From Botryllus schlosseri (Eukaryota), in the NCBI GenBank assembly GCA_051294905.1, contig CM119371.1:17484001-17548000 (forward strand): DNA of 64,000 nucleotides, in the 5' to 3' direction. Below the pieces are notes generated by a model. The model saw only the letters and a program-made list of their open reading frames with translations. It did not search any database and was not told the DNA's origin. Each line of letters opens with the position of its first letter. Positions within the stretch are counted from its first letter, which is position 1. The position numbers and the translations under genes are program-made. Of this stretch, positions 8,001 to 53,109 are shown one piece after another.

Positions 8001-9286
8001 CGTATGGTAACCCTAGCGAAATTTATATAGTAATCGATGGACGTGAGCACAATGATTCGAGTACTGTAATTTCAATCGAGTATTCTTTCTGATGATTCGA
8101 ATTCATTAGTGAGAGATAATCTAATCGCCTACTCAAATCATACGCAGTCCTATAGCAGTATACGAAACACGCAGTACAAAGCAACAGAAGGTTGCGGAAA
8201 CGACATTTATGTGAAGTAGGAATAAACATACAGAAGTGTCAGAAGTTGAAATTGAATAGGTATGGTTGAAAACACCAAGGATTATTATTTAATTTAACGT
8301 TGAATGGACATTATGTTATTGGTGGCCGCGTACCAGACACATATTTAAACTTTCACCGTCCTTGTGACGTCGTTATGAGTGATATTCCAATATTCGCCAC
8401 TCCACTCGAAGCCAAATATTCGATTCAGACTCGAATCAATGAGGTATATTCGATTTGCCAAATGAAATGCAAAAAATAAATATTTGCATTGACTTCATCA
8501 TATATCACATGCAATAAAATACCGCTTTGGTACTCCGCAGCCGAAATTGATACCTTTCGGGAGTATCTGCGTGGTAGAATCGTGTAGGGATCAAATATAT
8601 TACACGATCAAACCGATAAAACTCCGTTTTGTATCCTCTATCTCTTCCCGGCTTACACACAGCGCATGCATCGTAGCCTAGAGCTCAGCACAATTCAGCG
8701 CCACCTATAGCATCGACAATATCGCTCACATTTTACTGAAATTCGTTACAACTGACATATTTCCACCGCGTGAATAAGTGTTCATCTGTTCAATTGTTCC
8801 TGATCTTGGGACAGAATTTTAATGTCAAGATTTTCTCACTTTCCGTGACACTGAGTTCGAGGTGATAAGCTTGTCGGTAAATTTTGGAATACTTGCTATG
8901 TTTGACATGATAGGGATATCAGTTTGTCCGTGCTATCGAAGTGGCCGGTTTTGTGTCTCTATAAAAATTATTTTAATGAATTCGATTTCATTTATTGCAC
9001 TTACTCCTAGCGATGTCACACAAACTGATAGCATTACGTTCAACTCGTACAATTTGTTAATACACACATTGTTTCCAAATAATCCGAGGAGAGCTATTAC
9101 AAATTTGTGAACATGTGACTATCTATAAGTCTCGAATATAACCTGCTGATCTACCATATAGCTCAGTGCTCAGGAACGATTGTCCTGACTTGATGTTCAG
9201 AAAGATCCATCATGGAGTTTAATTAATATTTGTATGTTCAGTTTTTGTCTGATACGCTAGCTAATTGGTTCTAGGTTATAAATACC

Positions 9287-9359
9287 ATGGCAGAAGGAGG
9301 TCGTGGTCACAATTCTGGTGTCGCTGATGTCATGCCTTCATCATCCCCTGGGACAAGTG
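9287..9359 (+). CDS. NLR gene, coding exon 1 (MAEGGRGHNSGVADVMPSSSPGTS)
   Basis: Acceptor ttggttctag at 9274, ATG in good context (accATGg), donor g|gtttgt, phase 1. Confidence 0.7.
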
Positions 9360-9438
9360 GTTTGTTATGCATGCAATATTTGAGCTCAGACTATACTTAA
9401 TATTCATATAAACACTAACTATATCGAACAGTTTTATA

Positions 9439-10320
9439 TAGGAATGGTGTAAACCGCGGAAGGTTCAGGTTCGTGTGAACACGAACTTTGAAAAGGTTTT
9501 GTGCGTACTCGAACGTTGAGCCTTGACGTCACGTGACGTCCTATTGATAAATCCGACCCTAGATTTCAGTGAAGTGATATATTAATGTACCTAACGACGA
9601 CTCAGGCCAAATTATCCCACAAATGCTGAAGCACGTGCTGACTTTCCAAACCTCACCATATATATACTGGTGCAAGCAAATGATATAATACTCCCATAAA
9701 TTCAATCTCAGTAGTCGATTCGCCAACGATTTCGACGAGAACTTGTAAGGTAATATAAGCTCACGCCCAAACAGTCTAGGCCAGTCCGGATAACGTATTT
9801 GGCATCTTACTATTGGTACATTGATATTGAGCTGAGTGTAAAGCATGCCGACAAGAAAGCATAATGGTGAAGCGTCCTGCTTCGTGATCGGTAGGTCGTG
9901 GGTTCGAATCCCGGCTGGGTAAGACCAAAGACCTGCTTAGTAACACTGGCATCCTTGACTTACCTGCTTGGCGCTCATGCAGTACTAGCAGAGCATGAAG
10001 GGGTGGCACAAGACTTAGAAAGCCGAACAAGGCGTTGTCTGCACCTTCCTTGTCCAGCGGCATATGCACATCATGCACTTATCATATGCACGAATCATGT
10101 GTATGTGTATTATGAGTCGGTGTATATGGCGCAAAAACAATCGCATGGATTCGGTTTTATGATGCAATATACATATCCAATGAAGATGGATCCCGTACGC
10201 TTGATATATTTTGTACACTAGACAAAGATGTATTCTTTATATCCATTTCATTGATTGATCCAATAAACATTATTCGCGGACTACCTGCATATGGTGTATT
10301 CCTTCATGATGTTTTGTGAA
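9439..10320. mobile_element. TAGGGATGGTGTGAAC-family hAT non-autonomous element (3'-truncated), in NLR intron 1
   Basis: Colinear with complete copies at 33215-34173 and 58170-59090; interrupted by a SINE. Confidence 0.85.
9846..10075 (+). mobile_element. tRNA-derived SINE (family B)
   Basis: A box taatggtgaagcg, B box ggttcgaatccc, no intact acceptor stem, followed by a unique body. Confidence 0.8.
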
Positions 10321-10437
10321 ATAGTGTACAGCTCACGGCAGATTATCACTAGGGCTGGGCGCAATGATTCGAGTACTCGAATCTTAATCGAGTATTAATT
10401 GTGATGATGATCAAATGTGTGATCAAATGTGTTTCAG

Positions 10438-10569
10438 GATACGCAGCATTGGCTGAAGGTGAAAATGTCAATGTGCAGTTCACAAAGAGCTCTGTTACCG
10501 TTGTGGGTGGAGATCAGGTCGTTTACAACATGATCGGTGTTGAAAGTAAAGCAAGTCATCCAAGGCAAG
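10438..10569 (+). CDS. NLR gene, exon 2 with RHIM-like motif (GYAALAEGENVNVQFTKSSVTVVGGDQVVYNMIGVESKASHPRQ)
   Basis: Acceptor tgtgtttcag, donor g|gttagt, 132 nt, phase 1-1, open frame joining exon 1. Confidence 0.75.
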
Positions 10570-11224
10570 GTTAGTATAAAGCTTTGCCATTCAATTCGGA
10601 GCCACGATTAGGGAGAGTGATTCACGTAAACGTACGTTCCAATCACAAGCCAAATATTAAAAAAAAAATAGGCACACGACTAAAAATAATAAGTGTAATA
10701 GTGTTGAGAGGCATTGATCTGTAGGGGAGATATACCTGCTCTTCACTTAAATACGGGTTTCCCCCACATTTGAGCAAGTGAAACAGTTACATAGGCGACA
10801 CTTAAACATGAGACTTTGGTACCTCAAAGCTGACCCATTATTAAAACTTTAGCATATTTTTATTACGATAAGCCTAAGATTCCTGGGGAATTGACTGGCA
10901 TTTCTGCAACTCCCCAAAGCTAACAAACGGTCGGTCCAAGAGGTCCGCGGACTCCACTTCATGAACCCGTATATATATAGGCGATCGATCGATCATCTTG
11001 GGATGATATTATAAATGAATACAGTAGCCTATATGAGTAGCAGATATAAATATAATATATGATATATATTCTTTTATATTACGAGTGTCACTAAGTGATT
11101 GGTGTAAGATCCGGAAATAACCACGTTTAAGATCAATGTCTCTTGTGTAGATAATCATGTTAAATGCGGTTGAGATATTTCATAAGAGATGTCGTGTTTT
11201 TAGTAATAAATCATTTTGAAACAG

Positions 11225-11326
11225 GTGATAAGCAAAGGAGAAACAAAGACTGGTGGAAAAGTATCCGACGAAATGTTAGCAATTTTTTTAAGCGGTCATC
11301 AGCATCATCATCAAGTGATCAAGATG
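11225..11326 (+). CDS. NLR gene, exon 3 (GDKQRRNKDWWKSIRRNVSNFFKRSSASSSSDQD)
   Basis: Acceptor cattttgaaacag, donor g|gtaaat, 102 nt, phase 1-1. Confidence 0.7.
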
Positions 11327-11442
11327 GTAAATATGTGTTCAGGGCAATTCATTGTTCTTTATGTATATCATCGAAGTGTAGGATGTATCCACTTCAACAC
11401 CGCAATATGTAGGCGTGGCCGCGTGGCTGCCGCAATGAGCAG

Positions 11443-11512
11443 GTCCCAATGAACAGATTGGTCTACTATATTATTATTGGGCTAGCGGCAGGACTGATAA
11501 TTATCTTACTAG
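11443..11512 (+). CDS. Possible phase 1-to-2 linker exon (GPNEQIGLLYYYWASGRTDNYLT)
   Basis: Only nearby segment I found that reconciles the exon 3 phase-1 donor with the phase-2 NACHT acceptors; donor ag|gtacac is acceptable, acceptor aatgagcag is weak. Confidence 0.3.
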
Positions 11513-11607
11513 GTACACTGAGTTGCGTATCTATAATCGTAGCATCGTAATCCATATACTGCAACAAGCTTTCGTTGAGGTTCACGCCATCTGGTTAGTA
11601 TACTTAA

Positions 11608-11790
11608 CCGAGCGAGATAGTTTATTGGTGATGCGTCCGGATTCTCGATCGGCAGGTTGTGATTTCGGTTCCCGGTCGCGTCAGGGTAAAGACTCGAAAA
11701 CTGGTATACGCACTACGCAGCTATCACGCTAGACTGTCAGCATCCACGGATTGCATGACGGAGAAAAAAACCGGGGGTGCAGACTTGGTG
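11608..11790 (+). mobile_element. tRNA-derived SINE (family C)
   Basis: tRNA-like head cgagatagtttattggtgatgcg with degenerate B box gatttcggttccc, then non-tRNA body. Confidence 0.65.
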
Positions 11791-12005
11791 ACCTTTCAGT
11801 TGTATCGCATCTTTGTCGTCAACGCATCCTGGATTCTGGATTATTCAGACCATTGGTTATCGAACTTTTTAAACACCTTCATGATGATGAAAAACTTGGC
11901 ACCCCACTCTGTCGTCATATCAAACAAATTTTACAGCTTGTAGCCTACTTTATAGGGCCACCGTTGTAGACGACGCTTTATCTGCTCATTGTGAATCATA
12001 TTAAC

Positions 12006-12926
12006 CAGTGCTTGGGGAACCGTTTTCGACGGTAGAGACATATTGGACAATATTTTCAATTGTAATTCCCAAACAGCCATACATGCCAATCAATTGTTAC
12101 GTCAACATTTACATCCGTGACGTATTGGTAGCACCAATATATGGGATTCGTGGTGTACGGATATTTTTCTGCCCACATGGGTGGGAGCCAAACATGTTCA
12201 CTACAGCAGTAAATACCCACCGTGTGATACGACAATAACGTGGGGTTTGCGGAGGAAACTGAGGCAGTGCCTCAGATGTCGTCATGGATGAGTGAAGAAA
12301 ATTGTGAACCCTTCAATGGTTACTGGTACTTTCTATCGATGTTTATGAATGACTAGTTTTTGAACATTTTTATTCCCAAAATCTCGAAATTTTCATTTTT
12401 ATTGTTCGTAAACAAAGCAAGAATGGAGAGGTTAGGCTAGGACAAGGCTAGCCCTCACCTATGTGCAACAGCGCAAATCATCGTAAATAGCTTAGAATTT
12501 AAGATCACTGATCCAAGTATTGATCAACTTCTAAAATATTCGGCGTAACGTAATGTTGCGTTACACACCTACATTTTTACTGCGGTGCTAAAAAGCTACT
12601 AACCAATCAAGAAAATGGACAGCTATGGCGTTGTTTTTATTTTTAATTTTTAATTGTGAACGTCACTTCCAAGACATCAACTTAAATTTGGCGATTTTGA
12701 AAAGACGGTGGTACGAGCCCCTTACTCTGGATACCCCACTGTCTTGACCTCTCAAAGACATGTTTATGCTTCCACGGGAATAATTATTCTCGCTGTCATG
12801 AAAATTTACCAACGAGTTGCTGGAATATTGATCAAATAAGTAAAAAATTGAAAATGCCTCAAAGAGCCATATCTTATACCCAAAATATCCATATATGGCT
12901 CGCGAGCAATAAGTTTCCGGCCAACG
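12006..12926. mobile_element. hAT-type MITE, inverted partner of 17073-18233
   Basis: cagtg terminus; ends and internal blocks (gataccccactgtcttgacctctcaaagacatgtttatgct) are reverse complements of the 17 kb copy. Confidence 0.85.
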
Positions 12927-15083
12927 AAAAACGGTCAAATGAAACAAACAGATTGACCTAGCTTAAGCTCAACGTACCGCAATATTCTAACTGAATCACG
13001 ACTGCTTAGGCATTGGTTTTAATATCAAGAAGCACATGACGAAAAATTGTGATTTAGACCAGTGCTCTTCAACCTTTTTCGTGGTGCGTCCTTGTAACGT
13101 CTACTGGAAACTCGTACATCACGGACCACATAACACGCTGACTCCGTAGTAAGCCTAACACAGGGATGTTCACTGTTCAGCCTTTTTGGTATTCACGGCC
13201 GTATTTGGATTAAATATATAGCATAAGGCCGCATTCCGGGAACGACCCGTCATGGGTCGGCTATATAGACGTTATGTAATCCTGCTAATAGGCTACTGGA
13301 AACTTCGCGCCCCGGAGAGCCCTTGTGGGGTTTTGCGCCATCACTGATTTCCTGCGTATAGAAGCTTTTAACTGTACCAGCAGAACATCCCACAAGCTTG
13401 CTATCTGTGCTCCGAAATTGGGAAGATAAATGCTAGGAAATGTTATCTTGATGCTTCTCCTTATCGCGCAGATTGCGAAAAATGTTTCCACCCGGAAAAT
13501 TAATTTCGTCGATACTATTGGTTATTTCATACATTACTTTCAAATATTTATCCATTTGTTTAGCCTACGTGATCAGAATAAACAGTGGAGCTGATGGAGG
13601 GGCTGTCTTCGAAAATTTTGGACACAAAATTAATGATGTTGCATCTTCCGATTTTATTGATCGATCAAATTTATGACGGTGTCAGCATTGTATGTCCTGG
13701 AGTTGAACCAAAAGTAGAATCTCTAAATTTATGAACAGATCACTGCTCCCTGATTCAAATCTCCATCCAGTTCGAAGAATCGGGAGAACCGACTTTTATC
13801 CCCAGTTTTGAAAATTGTGTATTGAGCTTGACCATCTTATGAAATGTCGCCAATGTTTCCGACCCGTGCACAATATCAGCGAATCGACGATTGGTTGGAT
13901 TTGAATCAACATATACAATATCTCCATATCGTCACTATATATTCAAATACCAATAGTGCGTTTAGGCTTATGATCCCAATTTTATATAGTACGGCCCGCG
14001 AGAAAAAAAGTTTGCCCACCCTTGCTCTAGGGTGTACCAGATGCGGCGTACTGAGGTGAAAAATATTCGCCATTATAGGAGGAACCGATGACAAGCAATC
14101 ACGATAAATAGGCAAGTTTACGTTTCGGAACAGGTCTATAGGACTAGTAATTACCGCCAATCATTATTTCCACGCGTGTCGTGCTTGTATTTATACCCTT
14201 GTGTTATACTCTCTATCGTATTTTCGTTTAACTGCACTCTGGATCGTGACCGTGTCGCCTGTCCTAAAGTTGTTGTTCTGCTGATAATATTCTCAATTCA
14301 TACTGAATCTTCGTCGTATGAGTTATTGTTCGAATAAGATCAAGAGCATAACAATCGGTGTCAGAATTCGAGTAATGTAGGGGTCCAACTCGAATAGATC
14401 TATTCCGTTGAGTTCGATGAAATGTCTGTATCATTACGAAAACATAGTTGCTGCGCTGCGCCTACCGATAATCAACGTCACCCGCAAATTCGCTACCCGA
14501 CATCGTACACTTTGAATTGTTGGATTGCTCGATGGATTAATTTATTGGAATGAAAAGATGACTCACATATTCAATATAGTTTTCAAATCCAAAAGTTCTT
14601 CCAAAGCAATTGCGAGGAACACTTTGTCAATTACAATTTCAAATTACAAACATAGTAATGTATATTGCCGTTTGTAAGATAGTTTTCTGTAGAGAAAAAT
14701 AATTGCCCATTCCTGCCATAGGATACACCGGGCTGAAGAGTAAGCGAAATCCTTCCTGATGATACAATCAATATCCACTGCCTACAGGGTTGCAGAACGG
14801 AAGGCTAAACGGGGTATTAGTTTGATATGCGATCGTACCGTCATATATTTGTATTCGTAACAAACCGTTTATAATAGTCTGTGTTCACGTGAGCATGAAC
14901 CTCAATGCAGGGCACTTTTGAAAATCCATGCGCGGTTTAATTAACATATAAGTAACGATAAACTGTATCGATCCGTACATATGAAATGACTCTTTATTTC
15001 CGTTTCAGGCATTATATCCAGAAATCTAATACGAATTACCAACGAAAATACCATGAAATTGACGGCTGTTGACATCCTTTCAG

Positions 15084-16432
15084 ATTTGAAAAGCTTCAGC
15101 AACCTGACTTTGAAGCTTTCCCGCAAATGCAAGAAATCGACGTGGAAGATTATTACAAAGGTCGCTATAACAATTCCAGCACGCAACGATCTCAGAAGTT
15201 AGGTGTCCATAATCAGCTGACAAAGGAAGTTGGGTTTTTTTGCCAAGAGGAAATTAAAGCAAAAACGATCGGAATTGATAACGTAATGACATCCATATGG
15301 CAAAGAGAAAATGGAAGCTCGCTAGAAACAGTTGGAGTAACCGCCATAGTGGCATCTGCTGGATCTGGAAAATCCACACTCACACGCAGAATAGCAAGAC
15401 AAGCTCTCGGTATATCTACTGGAGACGATGTCAAGTATCCACCATCTTACGATAAAAAAATGGTGCTTTATATTGAATTGAAGGATATAGAAGAAGTTCG
15501 CGAACTTAAACCGTCTCAATTTCTATTTGGGGGAATGTATCAAAGCGAAGAGGAAGAAGATCATGCATTCAAATGGCTATATAATCACCAGTCTGATGCA
15601 ATTTTAATATTTGACGGGCTTGATCAAGCAAGCTGGAGGTTTTATGAAAAGAGTCTCCGAAACATAGGAAACCATGAAAAAGCAAGTTCCTGGACCGTCA
15701 TGTATAACATTCTATCCCGTAATATCCTCCGTCACGTGAAAGTTTACATAGCATCACGCGAATTCAAGGTTTCGGAGTTGCCGGCGATGGCGCGACCCGA
15801 AACCATCATTAAGCTGAATGGTCTTACTTTAGAAGATGCGCATAGGCTATTTGTCTTTTTACTCAAAGAGAATGGTGAGGAAATATGGCAGAAAATTGAA
15901 TTCATGTCACCAAGACTGCTGAATTTGATTTCTGTCCCAGTTTTCTTGATTTTAACTGCAATTGTGATGGGAAGGGATCCAAGTAAACCTCCTCCGAAAA
16001 CATTAACAGAACTGTACAAGAGAATCGTATTAGCTCTGCAAAGCGTTGAGAACATTCGAAATAGGACACAAATTTTATCCATCGTCCACAAACTTAAAAA
16101 AATGGCATTTCAAGGTATGAAAGAAGAAAGGGTCGTGTTCAAAGAGACCGACTTGATACAGTTTGGAGTGTCCGCAGAGGATATCCAAGATTTAATGACG
16201 AAAGTTCCAGGGAACAATCTACTCAGCCGACATTTGATGCAAGGAGATTTCATATTCTTCTTCTGTCATCAAAGCCTTCAAGAATATCTGGCAGCGATCT
16301 TTATAACAGAAATGAAGTTTAACGAGTTCTCTCACTTCGATTTGGAACATCTTCATGAAGAGCGATGGTCCGTTGTGCGAAGTTTCGTGGCAGGCATCGT
16401 CTTCTCGAAATCAGAAAACGATCTTTACGAAG
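15084..16432 (+). CDS. NLR gene, NACHT NTPase exon
   Basis: Walker A ASAGSGKST (starts 15352), Walker B ILIFDGLDQ (15601-15627), ASRE sensor region, VPVF (PxxC-equivalent position), winged-helix FCHQSLQEYLAA (16261-16296), ERWSVVRSFVAG; donor gaag|gtcaga at 16432. Acceptors at 15008 or 15083; the ORF-track ATG at 15127 is probably internal. Confidence 0.95.
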
Positions 16433-17072
16433 GTCAGATATCAACCATAATACTATGTTTATAATTTTTGATTTCCCTCTACTGTAACCTCAACGGGATT
16501 TAAATTCGAATTCGACCGACGTCAACTGCATATCGTCTCGATAATTTCTTACGTAGGGTATCTAATCCACATGGGCATTTTCAGCGAATGTGGGCACTCA
16601 TTTAGGAATAATATCGTCGTGGTGTTCAATGATTATCAATCTCAAAACACCGGCAACGTGCTGGAAAATGATACTAATATACTAATTTTATACTAGGAAG
16701 TGAATTTTAAGAAATCAAATTACGTGGCTGGATTAAGTATAAAATATTGTGGGCGAGATAGTGGACGAACACATATTCCAATTCGCTGCAGTAGAGAATT
16801 CGACTTATGTATCTTTTTCCGTAGGACGTAGGTAGAGTTGAATTGCGAATTTCAAATTCGAGCGGGTTCCACTTAATTCGAAGACAGGCTTGCAATTCTC
16901 GTGTTTAGGTTACGGACTGAAATATAAACAATATTGTGTTCGTTTTAGCACAAGATGAGTGATTATATCGGAACAATGACGATCCATGCCATGAAAATTG
17001 AGAATGGACTTAAACAAAGACATTCCAGCTCCATTGTCGTTTTTAATTGGGTACATTCACGTGCATCTAGTA

Positions 17073-18233
17073 CAGCGGTCGGGAGCCTATGGCTCGTGAG
17101 CCATATATGGCTCTTTTGGGTACAGGATATGGCTATTTGATAATTTTTTTTAAATTTTGTACCTAATTTATCAATATTGTAGCAACTTGTTAATAAATTT
17201 TAATGAAGGATAGAATAATTATTCTCGTGTCAGCATAAACATGTCTTTGAGAGGTCAAGACAGTGGGGTATCCAGGGTTAGGGAATCGTGCCGACCTCTT
17301 TGCAAAATCCCCGCGTTCAAGTGCTGTTACACCAACGACTAATACCACTCGCGAATTCGGTCTAACCACAAACGCGCGCCTATAGCAATCTTGGATTGCA
17401 CGATACCCTGATTGACGAAAGAGAATAGAAGACATGGCCACCCTTGTTGAACAATGCAGTTTTCAAGTACACATTGTCTTTCTTATCTATGATGAGAAAT
17501 AAAATGACTTGGAATTGACATTCGCAATTACATGTTCAAATTAAAAACAGCGCCATAGCTATCAATTTTCTTGATTGATCAGTAGCTTTCTATCACCGCC
17601 GTAACAATGCAGGTGTGTAACGGAAGATTCGGTTACGCCGAATATCTTAGAAGTAGATCAATTCTTAGATTTTCAGAATCAGTGCGACGATTACATTTGA
17701 TTAATATCAGTGATCATAAATTCGAATTAAGCTATTTACGATGAGTTGTGCTGTCGCAAGTAAAGCTTAGCCCATCTGTGTCCCATCTGTGTCTCATCTG
17801 ACCCTTACCTCTTCTTCCGCGCTTTATTTCCGTACAATAAATATGAAAATACCATTATTTTGGGAATAAAAATGTTCAAAATCCAGTCAGTAATAAACAT
17901 CGATAGAAGATATCAATAACCCCTGCCGGGTTCACAATGTTCATTCTTTCATCCCTGACGATATCTGAGGCACAGCCTACCTTGCCTCTCCTTACCCCAC
18001 GTCACTGGCGTATCACACATTGGGTATCTACTGCTCTATTGACCATGTTTAGCTCCCCCTACCGACTGCAGAAAAACAGCGCATACTGCGAATCTCATAT
18101 ATTAATGCTTGCATACGCCAGGGATGTTCAATTGTGACGTAGCAGATGATTGACATGTATGGCTCTTTGGGAGTTACAATTGAAAATATATGGCCAATAT
18201 GAATTTTCGGTCGAAAAAGGTTCCCGGCCACTG
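17073..18233. mobile_element. hAT-type MITE, inverted partner of 12006-12926
   Basis: Termini cagcggtcggg / cccggccactg; reverse-complement colinearity with the 12 kb copy. Confidence 0.85.
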
Positions 18234-18240
18234 TCCAGTA

Positions 18241-19411
18241 CAGTGTTTCCCAACCCTTTTTCCACCCACGTACCACTTCGAGGTCTTATGCAGTGCTCGC
18301 GCACCACCTACATAATTTACGCACGCCGTAGGCGATCAAAATGTTTTCACTATTTATGACGCCGTAATCGCGTATTTTACTTATGTGGGGTGTAATAACT
18401 AGGGCTATTTTTTTCGTAAATATCTGAGGATGTTGATATAAAAAACTTAATTTTTACCAACTTTTGACCTCACGTACGTAAATTAGGTGTTTTCGCTTAT
18501 AATGGTAAAATTATACTACTTATAATCATTGCTGGTTAGGACTGTCTGTCCTTACGAAGTAGTTGGGCCTGAAAAAAGCGTTTTTGATTTGAAAACTGAC
18601 AAATTTTGACATGAAAATTTTTTATTTTAATGATATCTGGCTAAGTAGTTACACCGCTTATTATGGTACAGTTAATTAAAATTTGTTGCAGTATAACGAA
18701 CGATACTTTCCTACATTTATCGGGTAGCAAGTGTCTGTCCTTACTAAGCATCTTGCCAAGAATAGAGAAAAATCGTTCAACAGCAGTAATTGTTGGCTGA
18801 CAACACTGTGTTCACTGCCGGGGATACACCATGTTGTTTCATTCTGACAATGCTGTCGCCCATCACAATTATCCATCATGCGCTTCTTGATAAAATAGCC
18901 ATGCAATGCCCTAGCAACCTTTCTTTAGTTAGGATATTGCGGTACGTTGACCATAACACCATGTCAATTGTCAACCTATTTGTATCGTTCGGCGGTTTAT
19001 GATCGACGATCAGCAGACAATGGGCCATCTACAATGGCAGGCCTATAAAGTAGGCTACAAGCTGTAAAATATCAATATCTACGATACAAATGAAATGGAG
19101 GGGTCAAAAATTTGTTTTGACTTTGTAAACAATTTTCACGATTTTTTGACTTAATGCTTCAATTTTGTCAAAAAAAAATCGCCCTGGTAATACCAAATTC
19201 TATTAAACTAACAGCATTATCAGCCCGGTTTGATGAAATGCATAGAATTGTTTTTTCACCGCTAGTCTAAAAACTTGAAAAATTTCAAAATCAACCTCAC
19301 CTGAACTAATAACTTCCTCGGTCGAAAAAAAAAACAGAATCTACTCGCGTATCACCTGGAAGACCTTCGCGTACCACTAGTGATACGCGTACCACCGGTT
19401 GGGAAACACTG
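18241..19411. mobile_element. hAT-type MITE hosting a nested element
   Basis: TIR cagtgtttcccaacc / ggttgggaaacactg; TSD gtccagta / gtctagta. Confidence 0.85.
18400..19186 (-). mobile_element. hAT deletion derivative retaining the transposase C-terminus (copy 1 of 4)
   Basis: TIR tagggctattttt / aaaaatcgccctg, TSD gtaataac / gtaatacc; minus strand PTITAVERFFSILGKMLSKDRHLLP (hAT dimerisation-type motif). Confidence 0.85.
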
Positions 19412-19853
19412 GTCTAGTAGAACAGGTTGGTACAGACGAGTTGAGCAGAAAAAGTGAAATTGCTCGCGAAAGTAAACGGAAACAAAGATGATCTCGTGTC
19501 CATACTATTATTTGGCCCTGAAAGATAACGATATATACGTGAATCATGAATGTTTAGTGTTGACGTAGGTATGTCAAACTCAAGTTGGTCGGCGGCCGGA
19601 TTCAAACCTTAGAATTGATCGCAGGTCAGAATAGTCAAATTGCTCCAAATTATAGAGCCCTATTCTATCGATGCAATGGAATTCGTGGAATGCCGATGAT
19701 TGGTCGATTGAATACAGTTATATAAACTGCTAAAACAGTAACTTTAACGACGATGTACGTTGGCATATTGCTATGATTGCTATGTTTTTTGTCGCAATCA
19801 GGCAATAGAGCTGTGTATATAAACGCAGAGCTGGCACTTTAGTTCATCAATAA

Positions 19854-21228
19854 CACTGGTCAATACATATTTTTAGGCTGACAAAGTAGAGTGGTTTTGG
19901 GGGTTCTGAAGAGCACTGATTCCGAATATGACCTTGATTTTTTCAAATTGGCTCTTGTTGTGAAGATAACCCATGGAGCTATTTTGATCGAATCCTCTCA
20001 TTTTGGCGGTAATGACTAGATAGAAAAATCGACTTAGTCGTACTATAAAGTTTAGAAATTCAATCTACTTGTTATTTTTACACACAGAAGACTATTTTAA
20101 ATCAAAATACAGCAACAGCACTATATTTAGTGGTAAAAGATTAATCATAGTTACAGACTTTCACAGATATCATGTACATAAATAAACTCCAGTCTTGTAT
20201 ATAACTATTTACCTAGATGCTCAAATAACGTGGCATTAATTCAATCAGTTCTACGTCAACCACCTATAGTAAATTTGAAATAATCAGTTGGAATACAAGA
20301 TTATTGATATCTTTTAAATTGAAATTGTTTTTTGTACTATTTTCGCCTGTAAGCTATTTAGTGCAATTTCTCGAAAGGTTCCTGCAATGGTCTGACATAA
20401 TATGTTCAATATTGTACATCTCATCTGCCCTGATATCTTTCTTTTGTTGTTCTGATGTCTTGGTAGAACATCTCCCTTTGCTAATCAACAAGATGATCGG
20501 GAAATATATCAAGATGACTGAACAGGAAGTGAACTTTTATGCTCATGTTTGTTACAAGTTTTCGATATGCAGATAAGAATTTTCGGACCAACTGTTTGTA
20601 GCTGGGTGCATTGTGATCATCTAAAAAGTTTTATTTACTACATATTAGGGGAACTTACATGTTGTCAACTCCTTCCTAATGTGAAATTGGAATCTTTCAT
20701 CGGTATACTAGGTATACCCACTTTGTTAAATCAGTGGAAAATTATCCATCTACCAGTCAAAAGAAATGAGACACATATGAGTATTGTAGTTAGACCTTTC
20801 AAGGACAAATTTTATAGTTCTATACTCCTCTTTAATTTTGGTAGAATGACCAATTGATACAGGAGAATATGAATTTCCGTTGTGCAAAAGTACAATTTTT
20901 AGGCTTGACAAACTGCTTTTTGGACAAACAAATATTTCATATCATACCATGTTAATATTGATAGAATGACTGAGAATGACATGAGGGTTCCTTATAGTCA
21001 ATTAGTCATTCATGCGTAGTATGAAATTAGAAAAAACTTGATTTTCTTCCTACCAATTGATATATTTAAGGGTAAATATGGTGATTTTGGGCATTTTTAG
21101 GGGTATAAATATCTTCTGCCAGAGAGCCAATCTGGCAAAACGAATGTGATATTCGTAATCAGTAACCTCAAAAACCCCAGAAACGGCTCTCAGATGTTCT
21201 GCCTAAAAAATAATTTTGTTGACCAGTG
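19854..21228 (-). mobile_element. Chapaev3-type (CMC superfamily) DNA transposon, internally deleted
   Basis: CACTGGTCAA termini with long imperfect TIRs, TAA TSD on both sides; minus strand NFLDDHNAPSYKQLVRKFLSAYRKLVTNMSIKVHFLFSHLDIFPDHL...MFYQDIRTTKRRYQGR at about 20390-20630. Confidence 0.75.
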
Positions 21229-21539
21229 TAATAAATCGCGATTCCGGTTTTTCAAGGAGTCGAGGAGCTGTTACGTCATAAGCGAAAATGAAGTGCGCCC
21301 ACGGATATATATTTGCGTGATAAACCGGTACACCGGTTTCTAACTGGCGTTTTCACTCTGCAAATAAGTATATTTTGGTCCATTTCTCCATAACAATCTG
21401 TGCTCAGTGTGCACTTTTTCACTCTTGGGATTGGGTGTCAATGACAGCTGCTTGTTACTGAAAAAGGCGATTTTTGTACTAACAACCGAAAGATGTTGAC
21501 CTAAAAGTATAAATACTGATATTGTTCGAGCTGAAAAAC

Positions 21540-22075
21540 CTAAATTTGACATTATTTAGACCCCCTTGTTTGTAAATTAGGCGTCTTCCCACATCATGTT
21601 GGAATAGTACTACTTATCTTTATTTCTTGCAGGGACTGTCCGTCCTACGGAGTACATCAGCCAGAAAAAAAAAATTGACTTCAACGCTGACAAATTGTTA
21701 CATTGAAAAACCCAAGTTTTACCGAAATCTGAAGCTATGGAGAATTTCTGTAGTGTTACATCACGCAATATGGTAGAAATAATTTAAAAAGAAATTGTAG
21801 TACAACGAAAATACTTTTCTATATTCTCGGGTGGAAAGTGTCTGCCGTTACTAAGTAGCTTGTCAAACATGGAATAAGAACGTTTACCAGCATCAGTTGT
21901 TGGTTGCCAACTCTGAAATTGTGGGTAGCCTACAGTGCTGGTGACATACCGTGTTGCTTCGTTCCGACAATGTGCTCTACACCCTGCATCACAATCATTC
22001 ATCGTGTGCTTCTTGATATAAGAACCAATGTCCACGCATTCTTGTGGCATACTTATAGGTCAATCAGAGCCGAAA
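21540..22075 (-). mobile_element. hAT deletion derivative, copy 2 (truncated)
   Basis: Colinear with 18400-19186; minus ORF contains KRSYSMFDKLLSNGRHFPPENIEKY. Confidence 0.8.
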
Positions 22076-22189
22076 GAAGGCTACCTTGGAGCCGCATACC
22101 ACTCTGAGAGCCGCGGTTGGGAATCACTTGGTTGAGCGAGGAAGCTAGGACTTGTCAAGTCCGTCCATACGTCAGTGGTTATTACAAAG

Positions 22190-23005
22190 TCCATTTTTTT
22201 CTTGACTTGAAAAACAGAATATTTTGAATAAAAAAATCAACATTTTGGCAGTTAGTGACCATTAAAATCTTAATTTTGACCAGATTTGACCTAACTTATG
22301 CATGTTATTTGTGAGTTATGTGTTTTACCACATAGTGTTAGAATTGTTCTACTTATATTTATTTCTGGTTGCAACTGTCCGTCATTTCGAAGTAGTTTGA
22401 CCTGAAAAAACTTTTTTGACTCAACAAATGACAACTTTTTACATGAAAAAAATTGTTTTTACGAAATCTGGCTTTATGAAGAATTCAAGTATTTAAACAC
22501 CTGTCCTTACTAAGTAGATTGTCAAGATTGAAGAAAGAACGTTCAACAGCAGCAGCAGATAGCTGACAACGCTGAATTTGTGCGTACACTGTTGGCGACA
22601 CAACGTGTTGCTTCATTATGACAATGTTGTCTACCTCACAATTTTTCATCATGCGCTACTTGATATAATACTCATGCAATGTCCACGCAGTCTTGCTTCA
22701 GTAATGATATTGCGGTGCGTTGAGCAATGCGCATAACACCATGTAAACCTATTTGTTTCATTTGAATGTTTATGATTCACAACGAGCAGACAATGGGCTG
22801 ACTACAACGGTACGCCTATAAAGTAGACAACAATCTGCAAAATGTGAAATAATAAGTTCACCGACAGTGTAAAATCTCCGATACAAACGAAATGCAGGTT
22901 GCAAAAATATTTGGACTTCGGAAACAATTTTGACATTTTTGACCTAACGCTACGATTTTGACATCATTTTGACTATTTTTCACAAGTAAAAAAATCGCTA
23001 TAGTT
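22190..23005 (-). mobile_element. hAT deletion derivative, copy 3
   Basis: Colinear with copy 1; degenerate terminus aaaaaatcgctatag. Confidence 0.8.
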
Positions 23006-23035
23006 ATTGCTACTTCAAATTCTCCTTCAGTTCAA

Positions 23036-23470
23036 CTATGCCTTCATCACTTTCATTGCAAGTATGCCTATTAACAGTGCATCTCGATGGCAAAATATCT
23101 GTTTTTGCCACCTGAGAATGCTTGACACCAATCTCAATGAGCGAATGAGAACAATGGCCAGTTCTTCAATGCTGCCACGTTCTATAGCTGATAAGGGACG
23201 AACATCCTTAACAATATACGTTATAGATGCGTCCAATAATTTATTTTTGGTTGCCGCTGCTAGAACTACTGTGATGTTCCTCTGTCCTTTCTGAGTTTCC
23301 TGTCTTGCAGCTTTGCAATAAAGCTGCATGTAGCTCAATAAATGGGAAGTAACACCAGTCTCTCGATCATGCTCTGATGACTCATCACACAAAGTGCACG
23401 AAACGTTACCTGCGTACTTCCGGTATTTGGCACAATGCAAAACAGTGCTTTTGGGTTTATTAGGGGTGTT
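23036..23470 (-). pseudogene. Hermes/hobo-like hAT transposase N-terminal relic (BED-finger-like plus DNA-binding domain)
   Basis: PKSTVL...VSCTLC...GVTSHL (BED-like) followed by KNKLLDASITYIVKDVRPLSAIERGS, matching the DxRP[F/L]S motif of Hermes-type transposases. Confidence 0.65.
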
Positions 23471-24309
23471 GCTTTCATGTAATTTCCACCATCATTTTCA
23501 CAACACCGTAACTCGCACTCATACTGTTTAGACTTCTAAATATGGTCGCTCTCGTTCAACTATGATAAGAACAAGTATAATTCAGTAATATTTCAACATT
23601 GCAAAACCTCATAATTGCAACTCTCTGAAATATGTTAACGTTAACCAGTAACCGCATGCCTTTGATGTGTTTGTCAGCATATATCGCCTGAATTGTGATC
23701 TGTCTGTAATTAGGTAATAAAACAATGGAATACAATGCCGCAGTGTCCCGCGTAAACAACGGACAACATAATCGACCCTATTGTCGTAACTCCGTGATAT
23801 TTGCGAAATTGGAACTTCCTCAAACCTCACCGACGTCGATGACTTTTACTCGGCGTCGTGCATTAGTAAATACAAACTGGATGTAGTAACAATTCTTCTC
23901 TCCCACCGCTCCGCAATTCTGGTTGCGAAATCAGCGTACCCGAGTCAGGTTATTGGCACGCCAGAACTTGAAACTCAGTACAAGTTCAACTGTATCCGTA
24001 AAATAATTCACAATGCCGTCAGATCCGGATATGTGGAGACTAAAAAATTAATTTAATAGTTCTTGGGTCAGAAACCGGTTATACTAAACATCCTTTTTGT
24101 GTCTGTGCACTTCCTCGTCATTCCAAAAGGCCTAGATTTGGGCCCCGCTACAGGCCGGCAGTTACGGAATCAAAAACGACGAATATCGGCCTGTTATATA
24201 TCACAATTGTAATCGACAAACCTGATGAATACTACAAAGAACAACTCGAGGACAGATGACCACCAATACACACAATTTAGCTGGCCACACGAAACATGTT
24301 TTAAACCTG

Positions 24310-24950
24310 GTTACACACATATTGTTAGAATTGTACTACTTATCTTTATTTCTTGTTGGAAATGTCTGTCCTTACGAAGTGGTTTGGCCTTAAATAACTT
24401 ATTTGACACAAAAACTGACAAATTTTACATGAAAAAACAATATTTTAACAAAATCTATACCTATGAATAATTGCAATACAGCTAATCACGTATTACAGTA
24501 TAAATAATTAAAATTTGTTGCAGTACAATGAAATATACTTTCCTACATTCTCGGGTAGAAAGTGTCTGTCCTTACTGAGTAACTTGTCACGAATGGAGAA
24601 CAAACGTTCAACAGCTGTGTTAGCTGGTAACACTGAGGTTATGCATACACTGCTGGGATCAAACCGTGTTGCTTCACTCTGACAAGGTTTTCTTCGTCAC
24701 ATTTTGCCATCATCCACTTCTTGATATAGGAACCAATGCCTACGCAGTCTTGCCTGCATTAGGATATTGCGCTACGTTGAGCACATCAGTCTATACAAAC
24801 TGTAAAATGTGAAATGATAGGATTACCGACTGTACAAACATCTACAATACAAACGACATGCAGGTTGCATTTTTTTTTACAAAGTTTACCGGACGCTACA
24901 ATTGTGATAAATTTTTGAATTATTTCGTCATATTAAAAATAATCGCCCTG
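24310..24950 (-). mobile_element. hAT deletion derivative, copy 4
   Basis: Terminus aatcgccctg at 24950; minus strand PANTAVERLFSIRDKLLSKDRHFLPENVGKYISLYCNKF* at 24508-24627. Confidence 0.85.
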
Positions 24951-25008
24951 CTCATCAGAATTTCGTTCCAGTTAACTGTAAATATTGAAATAGCTACGTA
25001 TCGTAATA

Positions 25009-25588
25009 CCATAGTTTCCTATATGGTGTGAATACAGCGAGACTGAACGGCTCGCTGCATTTGGGTTACGTCATACTTTCCATTTGATTAAAGGCGACTA
25101 TACGGCAATTTTTTACCAGCTTGTCGAGAGCTAAAGTCGATAAAATAGGTATCAACGGAGAGCCACTGGTGTACTGATTGCAAGAATAAATTTTATTCTG
25201 CTCATGGTCCTGGAACCCCTCCAAATAACACTCGAAATTTGCACCGTAATCGAGAATGTTAATCTGTCTGGCTCTTTCTTCTTAGCTCAACTCTAGTTTC
25301 CCCAGATAGAGTTATTGTGTCACATTGCTAAAGTCGATGCAAAATTCGAGGCTCATTTTTTTTTTTTTTGGGGGGGGGGTCCCAGGGCCATGAGCAGAAT
25401 AAATTTTATGTTTTCGCAATCAGTTAAGAATGAGCTCTCCATTGATACCCGTTTTTACGAATTTAGCGCCAGGCAAGCCGGTCAATAATGGCCGTAAAGT
25501 TGCCCTTGGTCAAATGGAAAGTACGACGTAAACCAAATGCAGCGAGCCGTTCATTCTCGCTGTAGCCACACCACCTAGGCCACTATGG
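25009..25588. mobile_element. Foldback MITE with TA TSD
   Basis: Long imperfect TIRs (ccatag...ggtgtgaatacagcgagactgaacggctcgctgcatttgg / ccaaatgcagcgagccgttcattctcgctgtagccacacc...ctatgg), TA at 25007-8 and 25589-90. Confidence 0.85.
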
Positions 25589-25630
25589 TAAGACAAGACA
25601 ATTTCAACGATATTGCTTGTTGCGCCACAG

Positions 25631-25941
25631 TCCCAGATCAAACCAAGAAGCAAGATGCTCTCGCACGATCGATTCGTTCGCAACTCGAAAAGTACAATAA
25701 TGGATTCGCAGACGTTCGTATGGAAATCTATACAGCAATCTACGAATCAGACGACGACATTCTCATGAAACACCATTCCGTCATCAACGCATCTAAGATC
25801 TCATTGAGTCGCGTTGAAGCTAATATCATTGGATCGCTTGCAGCAAGGAATGAAACCCTTGATTCGTTGAATTTAACCCACTGCAAAATCAACGGCGAGC
25901 TTTTGGGCATTATTGCAAAGTGCATGGATAATCGAATTCAC
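25631..25941 (+). CDS. NLR gene, HD2/LRR exon
   Basis: Acceptor gcgccacag, phase 1 matching the NACHT donor; MEIYTAIYES resembles the HD2 end; LRR-like ETLDSLNLTHCKINGELLGII; donor cac|gtgagt, phase 0. Confidence 0.8.
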
Positions 25942-26426
25942 GTGAGTCACTTTAATAAATCATAGCTTCTGTAGGAAAACACTAGAAGAAGGTTTTCTAA
26001 ATTCATCAAATTCATACCCAGTGCATTTTTCAATGCGGTGCCTACCAGACATGGGGTGATTACGTCATGAATGTAATCGATTGCGATTACGAATACTTCT
26101 GAATCTCGCGATCACGATTACAGCAAAATCAGAAAGTAGTCGATCACGATTACGATTACATTGGAAAAGTAATCGCCTACTAACGATTACATTTATTTTG
26201 CTTCTTACAACTAATCTTAGAAGGTATATTGGAACAGAATATGAGGATTGCGATGAAAAGGCCTAATGAGATAATAACTTTATTTATAAATGATGCCTCA
26301 TATGCTTGTTACGTCATATTGTACCCATTGCCCAGCTTTATGGGAAAACTTTATCGCACCCAACAATTTGCATTCTTGCCAAGTCCGACTACCTCACTTC
26401 AACCTGTCTCGTAGGGGACTCAATAC

Positions 26427-49835: not shown

Positions 49836-51049
49836 TGTTGAATATGTATCTTGTATGGTAAATAGTGACGTGATTGACTCTTAGTTAATGTGTATACCTC
49901 AAATTATTATATATGTCCGATTCGAGTTAATCCCAACGTTTGCGGTGAATGCGACTTCGATATATCGTTATTCTTATGGGCGCGGCGATGATTGGTACTT
50001 TCGTTGATAGAATGCTAGCGGCATGTCGTACTTTCACCGAAAAGGGTGTGAAATAGTTTGCTAAATCTAGGAATCAGTCGCTTGGTAATTAGTTTACCAC
50101 GGAGCCGGCGTAGACGGCGATTCCAATACCCACAATAGCCGCGTTCACATATTAACACTCCAAATAGGTGTGAAATAGTTTGCAAACCCTGCGATCGCTG
50201 ACAAGATAATGTCTCAGACATACGCGACTTGATGTTACAGGCATATCGATCGCTCACGCGGTGAAATTTTCGTAAGCAGTTTGTCACAGAACTTGATTTC
50301 ACTCGTAAAGATTTAATAAGTAACGAATAACAGACCGCCAGTGTCAGTGCCAGTGTCGGAGTATTTGGTTGTATTAAAGGCTATATAGAGTACGCCTACA
50401 ACCAATGAACGAACGAATAAAGCTGCAACGACGACGACAACGACCGCCGACTGACCGCCGACCGACCGCCGACCGCTGCCAGCTGCCGCCGACCGCCGAC
50501 CACCGCCGATCCGCCGCCAGCTACTGCCTACTGCCGACCGCCGACCACCTCCGCCAGCTACTACCTGCCGCCGACCGCCGACCGCCGCCAGCTGCTGCCT
50601 GCCGCCGACCGCCGACCACCAGCGGCCGCCGCCAGCTGCTGCCTGCCGCCGACCACCGCCGACCGCTGCCAGCTACTACCTGCCGCCGACCGCCGCCAGC
50701 TACAGCCTGCCGCCGACTGCCGACTGATCGTTGCAAACCGCTACCAAACTCAAAAAGGAACCGACGGTTTTGGAGTATACTCCAAACCAAAGTCCTAAAG
50801 ACAAACAAAGAACCGCGAAGAGGACGCTATATGTCATACCAAACAGTAAGACTCAGCCTTTCTACAAACTACTCTTTACTGTTAAATACCTCGGAACTAG
50901 CCTTAACCTATAGACAAGGGGACAAGACCTCCTCTTACGCGCGCATCCTGCGGACAAGAACTCCGCAGGCAAATCTACTTCTCGCGGACTGACACTCCGC
51001 AGAAGACTGTCACTTCACCCAAGCGGACTGACAACCCGCAGAAACAAAT

Positions 51050-52331: not shown

Positions 52332-52395
52332 AAAAATACGGAAAAAAACGAGAGAAAAACTGAAAAAAAAAAATCTTCCAACAATCCCTTTTAAA

Positions 52396-53107: not shown

Positions 53108-53109
53108 AG

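What the first reader, a model, noticed from the sequence alone, without database searches (positions are those of the whole stretch)
10438..10569. NLR whose N-terminal effector region carries a RHIM-like amyloid motif on its own cassette exon
Seen: exon 2 encodes NVNVQFTKSSVTVVGGDQVVYNM, and exons 1-3 show no CARD, DD, DED, PYD or TIR. Known: RHIMs (e.g. RIPK3 VNIYNCSGVQVGDNNYLTM) and fungal NLR N-terminal motifs signal by amyloid templating. The exon aligns without gaps (V-x-F/I...S...V-G then a polar/hydrophobic tail), but the core reads TVVG rather than (I/V)Q(I/V)G. Inference: this receptor may signal by amyloid nucleation to an unknown partner, a poorly described mode for invertebrate-chordate NLRs.
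Basis: partly seen in the sequence, partly recalled or inferred. Interest (0 to 1): 0.75.

Follow-up and report, generated by a model that had tools for sequence, protein, structure and literature searches.

The report
Conserved sea-squirt NLR tag, not RHIM
The exon is real and belongs to a family of over 100 copies of a short, well-conserved, strand-forming tag at the front of immune-sensor (NLR) genes in what is probably a sea squirt, but it is not a recognisable RHIM, nothing shows that it forms amyloid, and in this copy a 7-base deletion cuts the tag off from the sensor's ATPase domain.

Summary
The peptide is at 10438-10569 (+). The exon is 132 nt, has AG/GT splice sites and is phase 1-1.

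It is one of at least 105 copies in this 495 Mb genome. The nearest named NACHT relatives are ascidian, not amphioxus. A conserved first exon (MAEGG...) precedes it. In 11 of 20 fetched paralog loci a NACHT exon with a phase-1 acceptor lies within 8 kb downstream. Three loci carry NHL repeats instead.

The first 28 residues (consensus SATLAEGENVNLKFTKSSVNVVAGDQIN) are under purifying selection (pN/pS 0.32, against 0.83 for the exon's tail). They are more conserved than the NACHT region (81% against 72% identity).

RHIM membership fails. There is no Pfam or PDB-profile match, and the (I/V)Q(I/V)G core is absent from all 33 copies examined.

Amyloid signalling remains an untested analogy. It rests only on composition (rich in N, V, T and G, almost no P), position, and the tag being shared by two gene types.

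This copy looks broken. A 7-nt deletion near 15080 shifts the frame between the conserved acceptor and the NACHT frame. No RNA reads covered exons 1-3 or the first 270 bases of the NACHT exon. "Exon 3" has no clear counterpart in the 20 paralog loci.

The scan already found this tag family on other DNA of this genome (s1-258698, s1-262578).

The parts
9287..9359 (+). Exon 1 (start codon to phase-1 donor G|gtttgt). It encodes MAEGGRGHNSGVADVMPSSSPGTS plus the first base of a Gly codon.
   Evidence: The sequence is. The same MAEGG...SPGTS|G-gt(g/a)agt exon lies 200-300 bp upstream of exon 2 in most paralogs. There is no Pfam hit. There is no RNA support.
10438..10569 (+). Exon 2, the finding. 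It is a 132-nt phase 1-1 exon carrying the conserved tag. The core is at about 10440-10517 (YAALAEGENVNVQFTKSSVTVVGGDQ). This copy lacks the family's 'IN' after GDQ.
   Evidence: Searches show the sequence. One search gives 105 genome matches. Searches show the alignment and splice phases. One search gives pN/pS of 0.32 for the core. One search shows this copy is the second most divergent of 21 from the consensus (71%).
11225..11326 (+). Its status is doubtful.
   Evidence: AG and GT sites and the phase were read. Among the 20 paralog loci there is only one weak look-alike (L027, E=0.17). The nearest paralog, L036, has only about 430 bp between exon 2 and the NACHT exon and no match to exon 3. 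No RNA reads cover it.
15009..16432 (+). NACHT exon (1424 nt). The conserved phase-1 acceptor is at 15008|15009 and the phase-1 donor at 16432|16433. It is frame-broken by a 7-nt deletion at about 15080. NACHT and NOD2_WH are encoded in the other frame (open 15073-16461). In the acceptor's frame a TAG falls at 15197-15199.
   Evidence: Pfam results are. Acceptor conservation and phase in 11 paralogs are. The exon length 1424 leaves remainder 2 on division by 3, whereas 1424+7 is a multiple of 3 (sequence).
25631..25941 (+). Next conserved coding exon of the same gene (phase-1 acceptor cacag|TC, phase-0 donor CAC|gtgagt), with a weak LRR match. It is intact.
   Evidence: tblastx against paralog L036 gives 53-82% identity over 25627-25950. 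The LRR_6 match is weak (E=0.1).

Best explanation
The exon is a divergent copy of a lineage-specific N-terminal tag. The tag consists of exon 1 (MAEGG..., about 25 aa) plus exon 2 (45-49 aa). It sits at the front of a greatly expanded NLR family in what is probably an ascidian, in the place where other animals' NLRs carry CARD, PYD or death domains.

Shown here. The tag's 28-residue core is under purifying selection. Its splice phase fits the NACHT exon in paralogs. The same two-exon module also precedes NHL-repeat genes.

Inferred. The tag is a short, strand-forming interaction motif. When the NLR oligomerises, the tags would be brought together and would recruit other proteins that carry the same tag. 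That is an adaptor role like CARD, PYD or RHIM. It might, but need not, involve amyloid-like stacking.

The tag is not a RHIM.

In this window the gene is most likely a recent pseudogene. A 7-nt deletion uncouples exons 1-2 from the NACHT frame.
For: Family and linkage:
- The genome has 105 matches to the exon peptide.
- All 21 aligned copies have an ag|G(A/G) acceptor, a GT donor and a length that is a multiple of 3.
- 11 of 20 fetched loci have a NACHT exon within 8 kb downstream on the same strand.
- In those paralogs the NACHT exon's acceptor is phase 1. Exon 2 can therefore be read straight into it.
- The genome holds at least 224 NACHT candidates, of which 94 were scored and listed. By my reading of the two coordinate tables, about 25 of the 105 tag matches have a listed NACHT match within about 12 kb downstream on the same strand.

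Constraint:
- Core pN/pS is 0.32 against 0.83 for the tail, at equal pS.
- Core identity is 81%, NACHT 72% and tail 43% in the same paralog pairs.
- The profile finds 12 further divergent copies, on short open frames in other public assemblies, that keep LAEGEN...VNVVAGDQI.

Sharing with another gene type:
- In L021 and L031 (chromosome C8), exons 1 and 2 are followed by NHL repeats (E=3e-25 in L021, 1e-18 in L031). L022 carries the same linker exon and the start of a matching repeat frame, which was not scanned.
- A linker exon in L022 and L031 has a phase-1 acceptor.
- The NHL-linked copies form one clade nested among NLR-linked copies (support 97/96).

Character of the motif:
- The core is enriched in N (3.8x), V (2.1x), T (2.1x) and G (1.4x), and P is nearly absent. 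This matches the bias reported for NLR amyloid motifs (bioRxiv 10.1101/2020.01.06.895854, read).
- AF2 gives a low-confidence hairpin with its turn at GGD.

Context: ascidian NLRs are described as lacking an N-terminal domain (PMC11508797).

Broken copy.
Against: - No RNA evidence exists for any junction. Four runs were laid and none covered exons 1-3 or the first 270 bases of the NACHT exon.
- Homotypic binding is pure inference. The four-copy complex prediction gave no answer.
- The NHL domain is usually a binding propeller, not an executioner. The 'partner' reading is therefore weak, and the tag-NHL splicing is itself only phase-compatible.
- The motif contains conserved charged residues (E, K, D). 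It might equally be an intramolecular element.
- The 7-nt deletion was not checked against raw DNA reads. It could be allelic or an assembly error.
Confidence: 0.55

Rival explanations
1. The exon is a RHIM-like amyloid motif, and the receptor signals by templating an amyloid fold onto a partner that carries the same motif.
For: The motif is short and conserved at an NLR N-terminus with no death-fold domain. Its composition is like that of known amyloid signalling motifs. The same tag sits on a second gene type. One paralog carries two tandem tag exons, which recalls multi-RHIM and HET-s pseudo-repeats. RHIM-NACHT architectures exist in amphioxus (PMC4262963).
Against: There is no RHIM, HET-s, sigma or PP Pfam match in 21 copies and no RHIM or HET-s chain in a PDB profile search. 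The G-phi-Q-phi-G / (I/V)Q(I/V)G core is absent in 33 of 33 sequences, and the alignment to RIPK3 is no better than shuffles. Tunicates were reported to lack RHIMs. This copy is frame-broken.
Confidence: 0.12
2. The tag is not a signalling adaptor. It is instead an intramolecular or regulatory element, for example a hairpin that packs on the NACHT or LRR domain for auto-inhibition, or a docking site for a different, non-homotypic partner or modifying enzyme.
For: AF2 predicts a simple hairpin. Charged residues are conserved. No executioner domain was found attached to the tag in the 20 loci studied. The homo-oligomer prediction gave nothing (that result is not evidence either way).
Against: The same two-exon module was moved intact onto NHL-repeat genes that have no NACHT. 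That is hard to reconcile with a role tied to the NACHT or LRR body. The symmetric 1-1 phase and occasional tandem duplication fit a portable module.
Confidence: 0.23
3. This locus is still a working NLR. Either the 7-nt gap is an assembly or allelic artefact, or a cryptic in-frame acceptor is used (for example ...tttgaag|CT at about 15113).
For: The NACHT frame stays open for 463 codons and the next exon is intact. Any decay must therefore be very recent. A cryptic phase-1 AG exists in the NACHT frame (sequence).
Against: Both nearest paralogs have the 7 bases. The exon length is a multiple of 3 only if the 7 bases are restored. No reads covered exons 1-3 or the first 270 bases of the NACHT exon in four RNA runs. 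The splice donors here (gtttgt, gttagt) are weaker than the family's gtgagt or gtaagt.
Confidence: 0.1

Closest known systems
RHIM (RIPK1, RIPK3, ZBP1, TRIF; insect cRHIM; amphioxus RHIM-NACHT protein BF82280 of Kajava et al. 2014, PMC4262963)
   Same: It is a short, non-globular, strand-prone motif that takes the place of a death-fold domain, including at the N-terminus of a NACHT protein in an invertebrate chordate.
   Different: There is no profile match. The defining (I/V)Q(I/V)G core is absent from every copy. The conserved part here is LAEGENxN...SxVNVVAGDQI(N). The published survey reported that tunicates lack RHIMs.
NLR-associated amyloid signalling motifs of fungi and bacteria (HET-s/HRAM, PP, sigma, BASS1-10)
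   Same: The conserved motif is about 25-30 residues long and sits at an NLR N-terminus. It is enriched in N, V and G and poor in P. The same motif is found on a second kind of protein.
   Different: No sequence similarity was detected to those of these families that have Pfam models or solved structures; the BASS families were not searched. The second protein is an NHL propeller, not a pore-former or enzyme. It is not an adjacent gene, and it carries the tag at its N-terminus rather than its C-terminus. Fibril formation is untested.
Death-fold adaptors (CARD, PYD, DD) of vertebrate, echinoderm and amphioxus NLRs
   Same: It occupies the same position in the protein. It is encoded on its own symmetric exon or exons. 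Its presumed role is to couple the oligomerised NACHT to downstream proteins.
   Different: It is not a six-helix bundle. It is about 45 residues long, strand-prone and probably unfolded on its own (pLDDT 59).
Annotated ascidian NLRs ('NLRC5-like' of Clavelina lepadiformis and Styela clava)
   Same: They are the nearest named NACHT relatives (about 30% identity). Their gene models also begin with a short N/V/I/T-rich stretch and no Pfam domain (Clavelina: MAEQSTSSNVNITDAVLNQSPVIKDAENVTINYTQ).
   Different: Profile-profile comparison gives no support for homology of the N-terminal stretches (probability 2.4% and 0.2%).

Membership tests
RHIM (Pfam RHIM model) | Significant match to the RHIM profile | tested here: not met
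   hmmscan of all 21 copies at E<=10 lists no RHIM; the window copy also has no hit at E<=1. HMMER's filters may drop very weak matches.
RHIM (Pfam RHIM model) | Core tetrad (I/V)-Q-(I/V/L/C)-G, within the G-phi-Q-phi-G signature | tested here: not met
   A regular-expression search over 21 genomic copies and 12 database copies gave 0 hits. The relaxed pattern phi-x-phi-G-x-x-N also gave 0 hits. The signature is as stated.
RHIM (Pfam RHIM model) | Similarity to solved RHIM fibril chains (RIPK1, RIPK3) | tested here: not met
The A1 profile searched against all PDB chains at E<=10 gave only adhesin and MthK noise.
NLR-associated amyloid signalling motifs (generic class) | Short conserved motif at the NLR N-terminus, next to the NOD domain | tested here: met
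   at the level of the paralog family. In the window copy the frame into NACHT is broken.
NLR-associated amyloid signalling motifs (generic class) | The same motif on a separate effector protein | tested here: inconclusive
   The tag precedes NHL-repeat exons at three loci, with a phase-compatible linker exon. No transcript is available, and NHL is not a known executioner. An earlier scan note reports five copies before putative RNases; this was not re-tested.
NLR-associated amyloid signalling motifs (generic class) | Strand propensity and N/Q/G/V/I-rich, P-poor composition | tested here: met
   N is enriched 3.8x, V 2.1x and G 1.4x, and P is 0.2%. AF2 predicts strands at 9-22 and 26-39. Q and I are not enriched.
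NLR-associated amyloid signalling motifs (generic class) | Forms cross-beta fibrils and templates the partner's motif | not testable with these tools
   This needs ThT, EM, fibre diffraction, DAmFRET and seeding assays. The complex prediction gave no answer.
NLR (NACHT-LRR) family | NACHT ATPase with Walker A, winged helix, and C-terminal repeats | tested here: met
   NACHT E=6e-16 and NOD2_WH E=7e-7. The GSGKS Walker A is present in the open frame. A weak LRR exon follows.
NLR (NACHT-LRR) family | Intact reading frame from the start codon through NACHT | tested here: not met
   A 7-nt deletion relative to paralogs lies at about 15080. A stop falls at 15197-15199 in the frame of the conserved acceptor.
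Death-fold N-terminal domains (CARD, PYD, DD, DED) or TIR | Pfam match in the N-terminal exons | tested here: not met
   There are no families at E<=1 for exon 1, exon 2 or the proposed exon 3.

The most novel reading that the evidence does not exclude
The tag family is a new, RHIM-unrelated amyloid-like (prion-type nucleation) signalling motif of chordates. On this reading it couples over 100 ascidian NLRs to tag-bearing partners such as the NHL-repeat proteins. That would be an animal counterpart of the fungal and bacterial NLR amyloid cascades, and it would explain how ascidian NLRs that appear to lack an effector domain signal.
Probability: 0.15. Interest if true: 0.85.

Novelty: new variant of a known kind. 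Interest (0 to 1): 0.4.

Why it matters
Ascidian NLRs are described in the literature as having lost their N-terminal effector domain (PMC11508797). That leaves open how they signal. A 28-residue tag that is better conserved than the ATPase domain, sits on its own portable exon, and is shared with a second gene type is a concrete candidate for the missing coupling element. It can be tested directly with peptides and reporter assays.

If it proved to nucleate amyloid, it would be a second, independent amyloid signalling motif in chordates besides RHIM.

This particular copy adds little. It is a divergent and probably dead member, and the scan had already met the family elsewhere in the genome.

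Tried and rejected
- RNA support. Four runs were laid on 9280-15279: one set of contigs that may be RNA or DNA, and three sets of raw RNA-seq reads. Only repeat fragments were covered (9880-10079, about 10350-10400, about 14145-14199). There were no reads or joints on exons 1-3 or the first 270 bases of the NACHT exon. Only 6-13% of each raw run is read, so this is not evidence of silence.
- Homo-oligomer prediction for a consensus-like tag (L024 exon 2, four copies) returned 'no answer', score 0.02. This is evidence neither for nor against binding.
- The ESM Atlas look-alike search returned nothing usable; the best score was 0.77.
- The profile search of 1.84 billion proteins found only short genomic open frames with the tag, plus bacterial Ig-like repeat proteins (DUF11-type 'VVAGDQLTYTV') that score by repetition. 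I rejected those as spurious.
- The weak EAD10 hit (E=0.14 in one copy) was rejected as noise.
- Homology between the tag and the N-termini of Clavelina and Styela NLRs is not supported by hhalign.
- I considered that the window's tag might pair specifically with the NHL-linked tags, because its highest protein identity is to them (67% and 65%). The tree does not group them, so I dropped the idea.
- I considered a mini-exon or cryptic splice that would rescue the frame. The only internal GT would leave a 16-nt intron, so I rejected it. The cryptic acceptor at about 15113 remains possible but has no support.

Full report
**1. The observation**

Window 10440-10568 (+) translates to YAALAEGENVNVQFTKSSVTVVGGDQVVYNMIGVESKASHPRQ. 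The flanks read tgtttcag|GA at 10437|10438 and CAAG|gttagt at 10569|10570. The exon is therefore 132 nt and has phase 1 at both ends.

An upstream exon runs from the ATG at 9287 to 9359. It encodes MAEGGRGHNSGVADVMPSSSPGTS and ends G|gtttgt. It also ends in phase 1, so the junction codon with exon 2 is GGA.

It has an AG, a GT and phase 1-1.

The only large open frame downstream is 15073-16461. It carries NACHT (E=6e-16) and the NOD2 winged helix (E=7e-7). None of the three small exons matches any Pfam family at E<=1.

**2. The exon belongs to a large family**

Searching the whole assembly (495.5 Mb, 219 contigs) with the 43-residue peptide gave 105 matches. I fetched 20 of them with 10 kb of context.

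All 21 copies share an ag|G(A/G) acceptor, a GT donor (gtgagt in all 20 paralogs) and a length that is a multiple of three, 132-147 nt. The alignment consensus is SATLAEGENVNLKFTKSSVNVVAGDQIN(xxx)IVYNITGAEGE. Positions A2, L4, A5, N9, S17, V19 and Q26 are invariant.

An MAEGG...SPGTS exon with a phase-1 donor lies 200-300 bp upstream in most copies.

In 11 of the 20 loci a NACHT exon lies within 8 kb downstream on the same strand. In those paralogs the NACHT exon opens with a conserved phase-1 acceptor (ttctgcag|GC GTx...). Exon 2 can therefore be read directly into it.

The genome holds at least 224 NACHT candidates, of which 94 were scored and listed. By my reading of the two coordinate tables, about 25 of the 105 tag matches have one of those 94 within about 12 kb downstream on the same strand. 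This happens even though fewer than half of the NACHT exons are listed.

**3. Constraint on the motif**

Nei-Gojobori counts over the 210 pairs give pN/pS of 0.32 for alignment columns 1-28 and 0.83 for columns 32-48, at equal pS of 0.35. In pairs of paralogs with complete NACHT exons, the 28-residue core is 81% identical, the NACHT region 72% and the tail 43%.

The conserved unit is therefore the first 28 residues.

A profile of the 21 copies, searched against 1.84 billion proteins, found 12 further divergent copies. All are on short open frames, which look like ORF calls that run into intron, from other public assemblies. They keep LAEGEN...S.VNVVAGDQI. The other hits are bacterial Ig-like repeat proteins that score by repetition, and I set them aside.

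**4. The organism**

The nearest named relatives of the NACHT frame are NLRC5-like proteins of the ascidians Styela clava and Clavelina lepadiformis, at about 30% identity.

This matters for two reasons. RHIM-NACHT proteins of amphioxus were published in 2014, and the same paper says tunicates appear to lack RHIMs (PMC4262963). In addition, ascidian NLRs are described as lacking any N-terminal domain (PMC11508797).

The Clavelina gene models begin with an N/V/I/T-rich stretch (MAEQSTSSNVNITDAVLNQSPVIKDAENVTINYTQ). It looks analogous, but hhalign gives no support for homology.

**5. Is it a RHIM?**

No test supports RHIM membership.

- None of the 21 copies hits the Pfam RHIM, HET-s, sigma or PP models at E<=10.
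- The family profile finds no RIPK, ZBP1 or HET-s chain among all PDB sequences at E<=10.
- The core tetrad (I/V)Q(I/V/L/C)G is absent from all 33 sequences examined.
Of 5000 shuffles of the exon peptide, 88% do as well or better.

**6. What speaks for an interaction tag, possibly amyloid-like**

- *Position.* It occupies the place of a death-fold domain and sits on its own symmetric exons.
- *Portability.* In L021 and L031 on C8 the same exon 1 and exon 2 are followed, 3.7-4 kb downstream, by NHL repeats (E=3e-25 in L021, 1e-18 in L031). L022 has the same linker exon and the start of a matching repeat frame, which I did not scan. The linker exon in L022 and L031 has a strong phase-1 acceptor. 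These NHL-linked copies form one clade nested among the NLR-linked copies (97/96 support). This fits a single exon-shuffling event followed by tandem duplication.
- *Tandem copy.* One NLR-linked locus (L040) has a second tag exon 1.1 kb after the first, with the same ag|GA acceptor.
- *Composition.* N is enriched 3.8-fold, V and T 2.1-fold and G 1.4-fold, and P is almost absent. This is the bias reported for fungal and bacterial NLR amyloid motifs and for beta-solenoids.
- *Predicted shape.* AF2 with the 21-sequence alignment predicts a long hairpin (strands 9-22 and 26-39, turn at GGD), but with pLDDT of only 59.

None of this shows binding, and still less fibril formation. A four-copy complex prediction gave no answer and counts for nothing either way.

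**7. This copy looks broken**

Aligned with its two nearest paralogs, the window lacks 7 nt at about 15080, between ...gacatcct and ttcag.... From the conserved acceptor at 15008|15009 the frame reads GIISRNLIRITNENTMKLTAVDILSD. This matches L036's GIKFRKLIQICNDNTKKLTAIDVLHD. It then runs out of the NACHT frame to a TAG at 15197-15199.

The exon is 1424 nt from acceptor to the donor at 16432|16433. It would be a multiple of three only with the 7 bases restored. The rest of the exon and the next conserved exon (25631-25941) are open. The lesion is therefore recent, or it is allelic or an assembly artefact. I could not check raw DNA reads.

Several smaller signs agree with decay.

- This copy lacks the family's 'IN' after GDQ. 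It is the second most divergent of 21 from the core consensus.
- Its donors (gtttgt, gttagt) are weaker than the family's.
- Intron 1 is about 1.1 kb, against about 0.2 kb in paralogs, and contains a repeat.
- The proposed exon 3 has only one faint look-alike among the 20 loci (L027, E=0.17). The closest paralog has just about 430 bp between exon 2 and the NACHT exon.
- No reads from four runs, three of them raw RNA-seq, lay on exons 1-3 or the first 270 bases of the NACHT exon. Only 6-13% of each raw run is sampled, so this is weak.

**8. Verdict**

The family behind it is of some interest: a conserved, portable, strand-prone N-terminal tag on over 100 ascidian NLRs and on NHL-repeat genes.

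The RHIM label is not supported. Amyloid signalling is an untested analogy, which I put at about 0.15. This locus is most likely a recently disabled and divergent member.

The scan had already met the same tag family on other DNA of this genome. Note s1-258698 reports at least 150 copies, 67 before NLRs and five before putative RNases. Note s1-262578 concluded that a conserved short motif was not a recognisable RHIM. My counts and conclusions agree with both. I did not re-test the RNase link.

Noticed in passing
L021:5703-6599:+, L031:5967-6869:+ and L022:9421-9999:+ (G000 C8, 3.86-3.98 Mb; a further tag match lies at C8:4008646): A tandem cluster of genes in which the same exon 1 plus tag exon are followed by a Ser/Asp-rich linker exon (phase-1 acceptor) and NHL repeats instead of NACHT. 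Pfam confirmed the repeats in L021 and L031; L022 was not scanned. This is a second architecture for the tag.
   Followed up: partly
L040:6701-6850:- (approximate; G000 C1 at about 11.76 Mb): A second, divergent tag exon (FATLADGENIYQNFINSEVKVVAGDEIHGNK...) lies 1.1 kb downstream of the first, with the same ag|GA acceptor, ahead of one NACHT exon. Several other pairs of tag matches a few kb apart appear in the genome table (for example C1:16397417 with 16402296, and C12:2905693 with 2907510).
   Followed up: partly
window 9880-10079 (intron 1): A repeat with a tRNA-like T-arm string (GGTTCGAATCC) is very abundant in RNA-seq (depth about 100-300), with sharp read boundaries at 10045 and 10079. 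ARAGORN calls no tRNA. It is probably a SINE-type element. Similar small repeat pieces lie at about 10350-10400 and 14145-14199.
   Followed up: partly
window 50400-55450: Retrotransposon remnants: an AP-endonuclease open frame (Exo_endo_phos, 52396-53109), a CCHC-knuckle, acidic gag-like open frame (51393-52331) and a DUF5641 open frame (54968-55435). Strand composition is strongly skewed (AT skew about 0.3 at 50-54 kb).
   Followed up: partly
P0037-P0051 (Clavelina lepadiformis NLRC5-like models), residues 1-48: Thirteen annotated Clavelina NLRs share a nearly invariant N-terminus, MAEQSTSSNVNITDAVLNQSPVIKDAENVTINYTQPPSTSSSDEDEWN (94% mean column identity). It is N/V/I/T-rich like the tag here, but not detectably homologous. 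It may be an independent or very diverged counterpart.
   Followed up: partly
window 16500-25600 (intron after the NACHT exon): This 9-kb intron is filled with several copies of one repeat family that also occurs in the corresponding intron of paralog L036 (tblastx matches at about 18.4-19.1, 21.3-23.0 and 24.3-24.9 kb).
   Followed up: no
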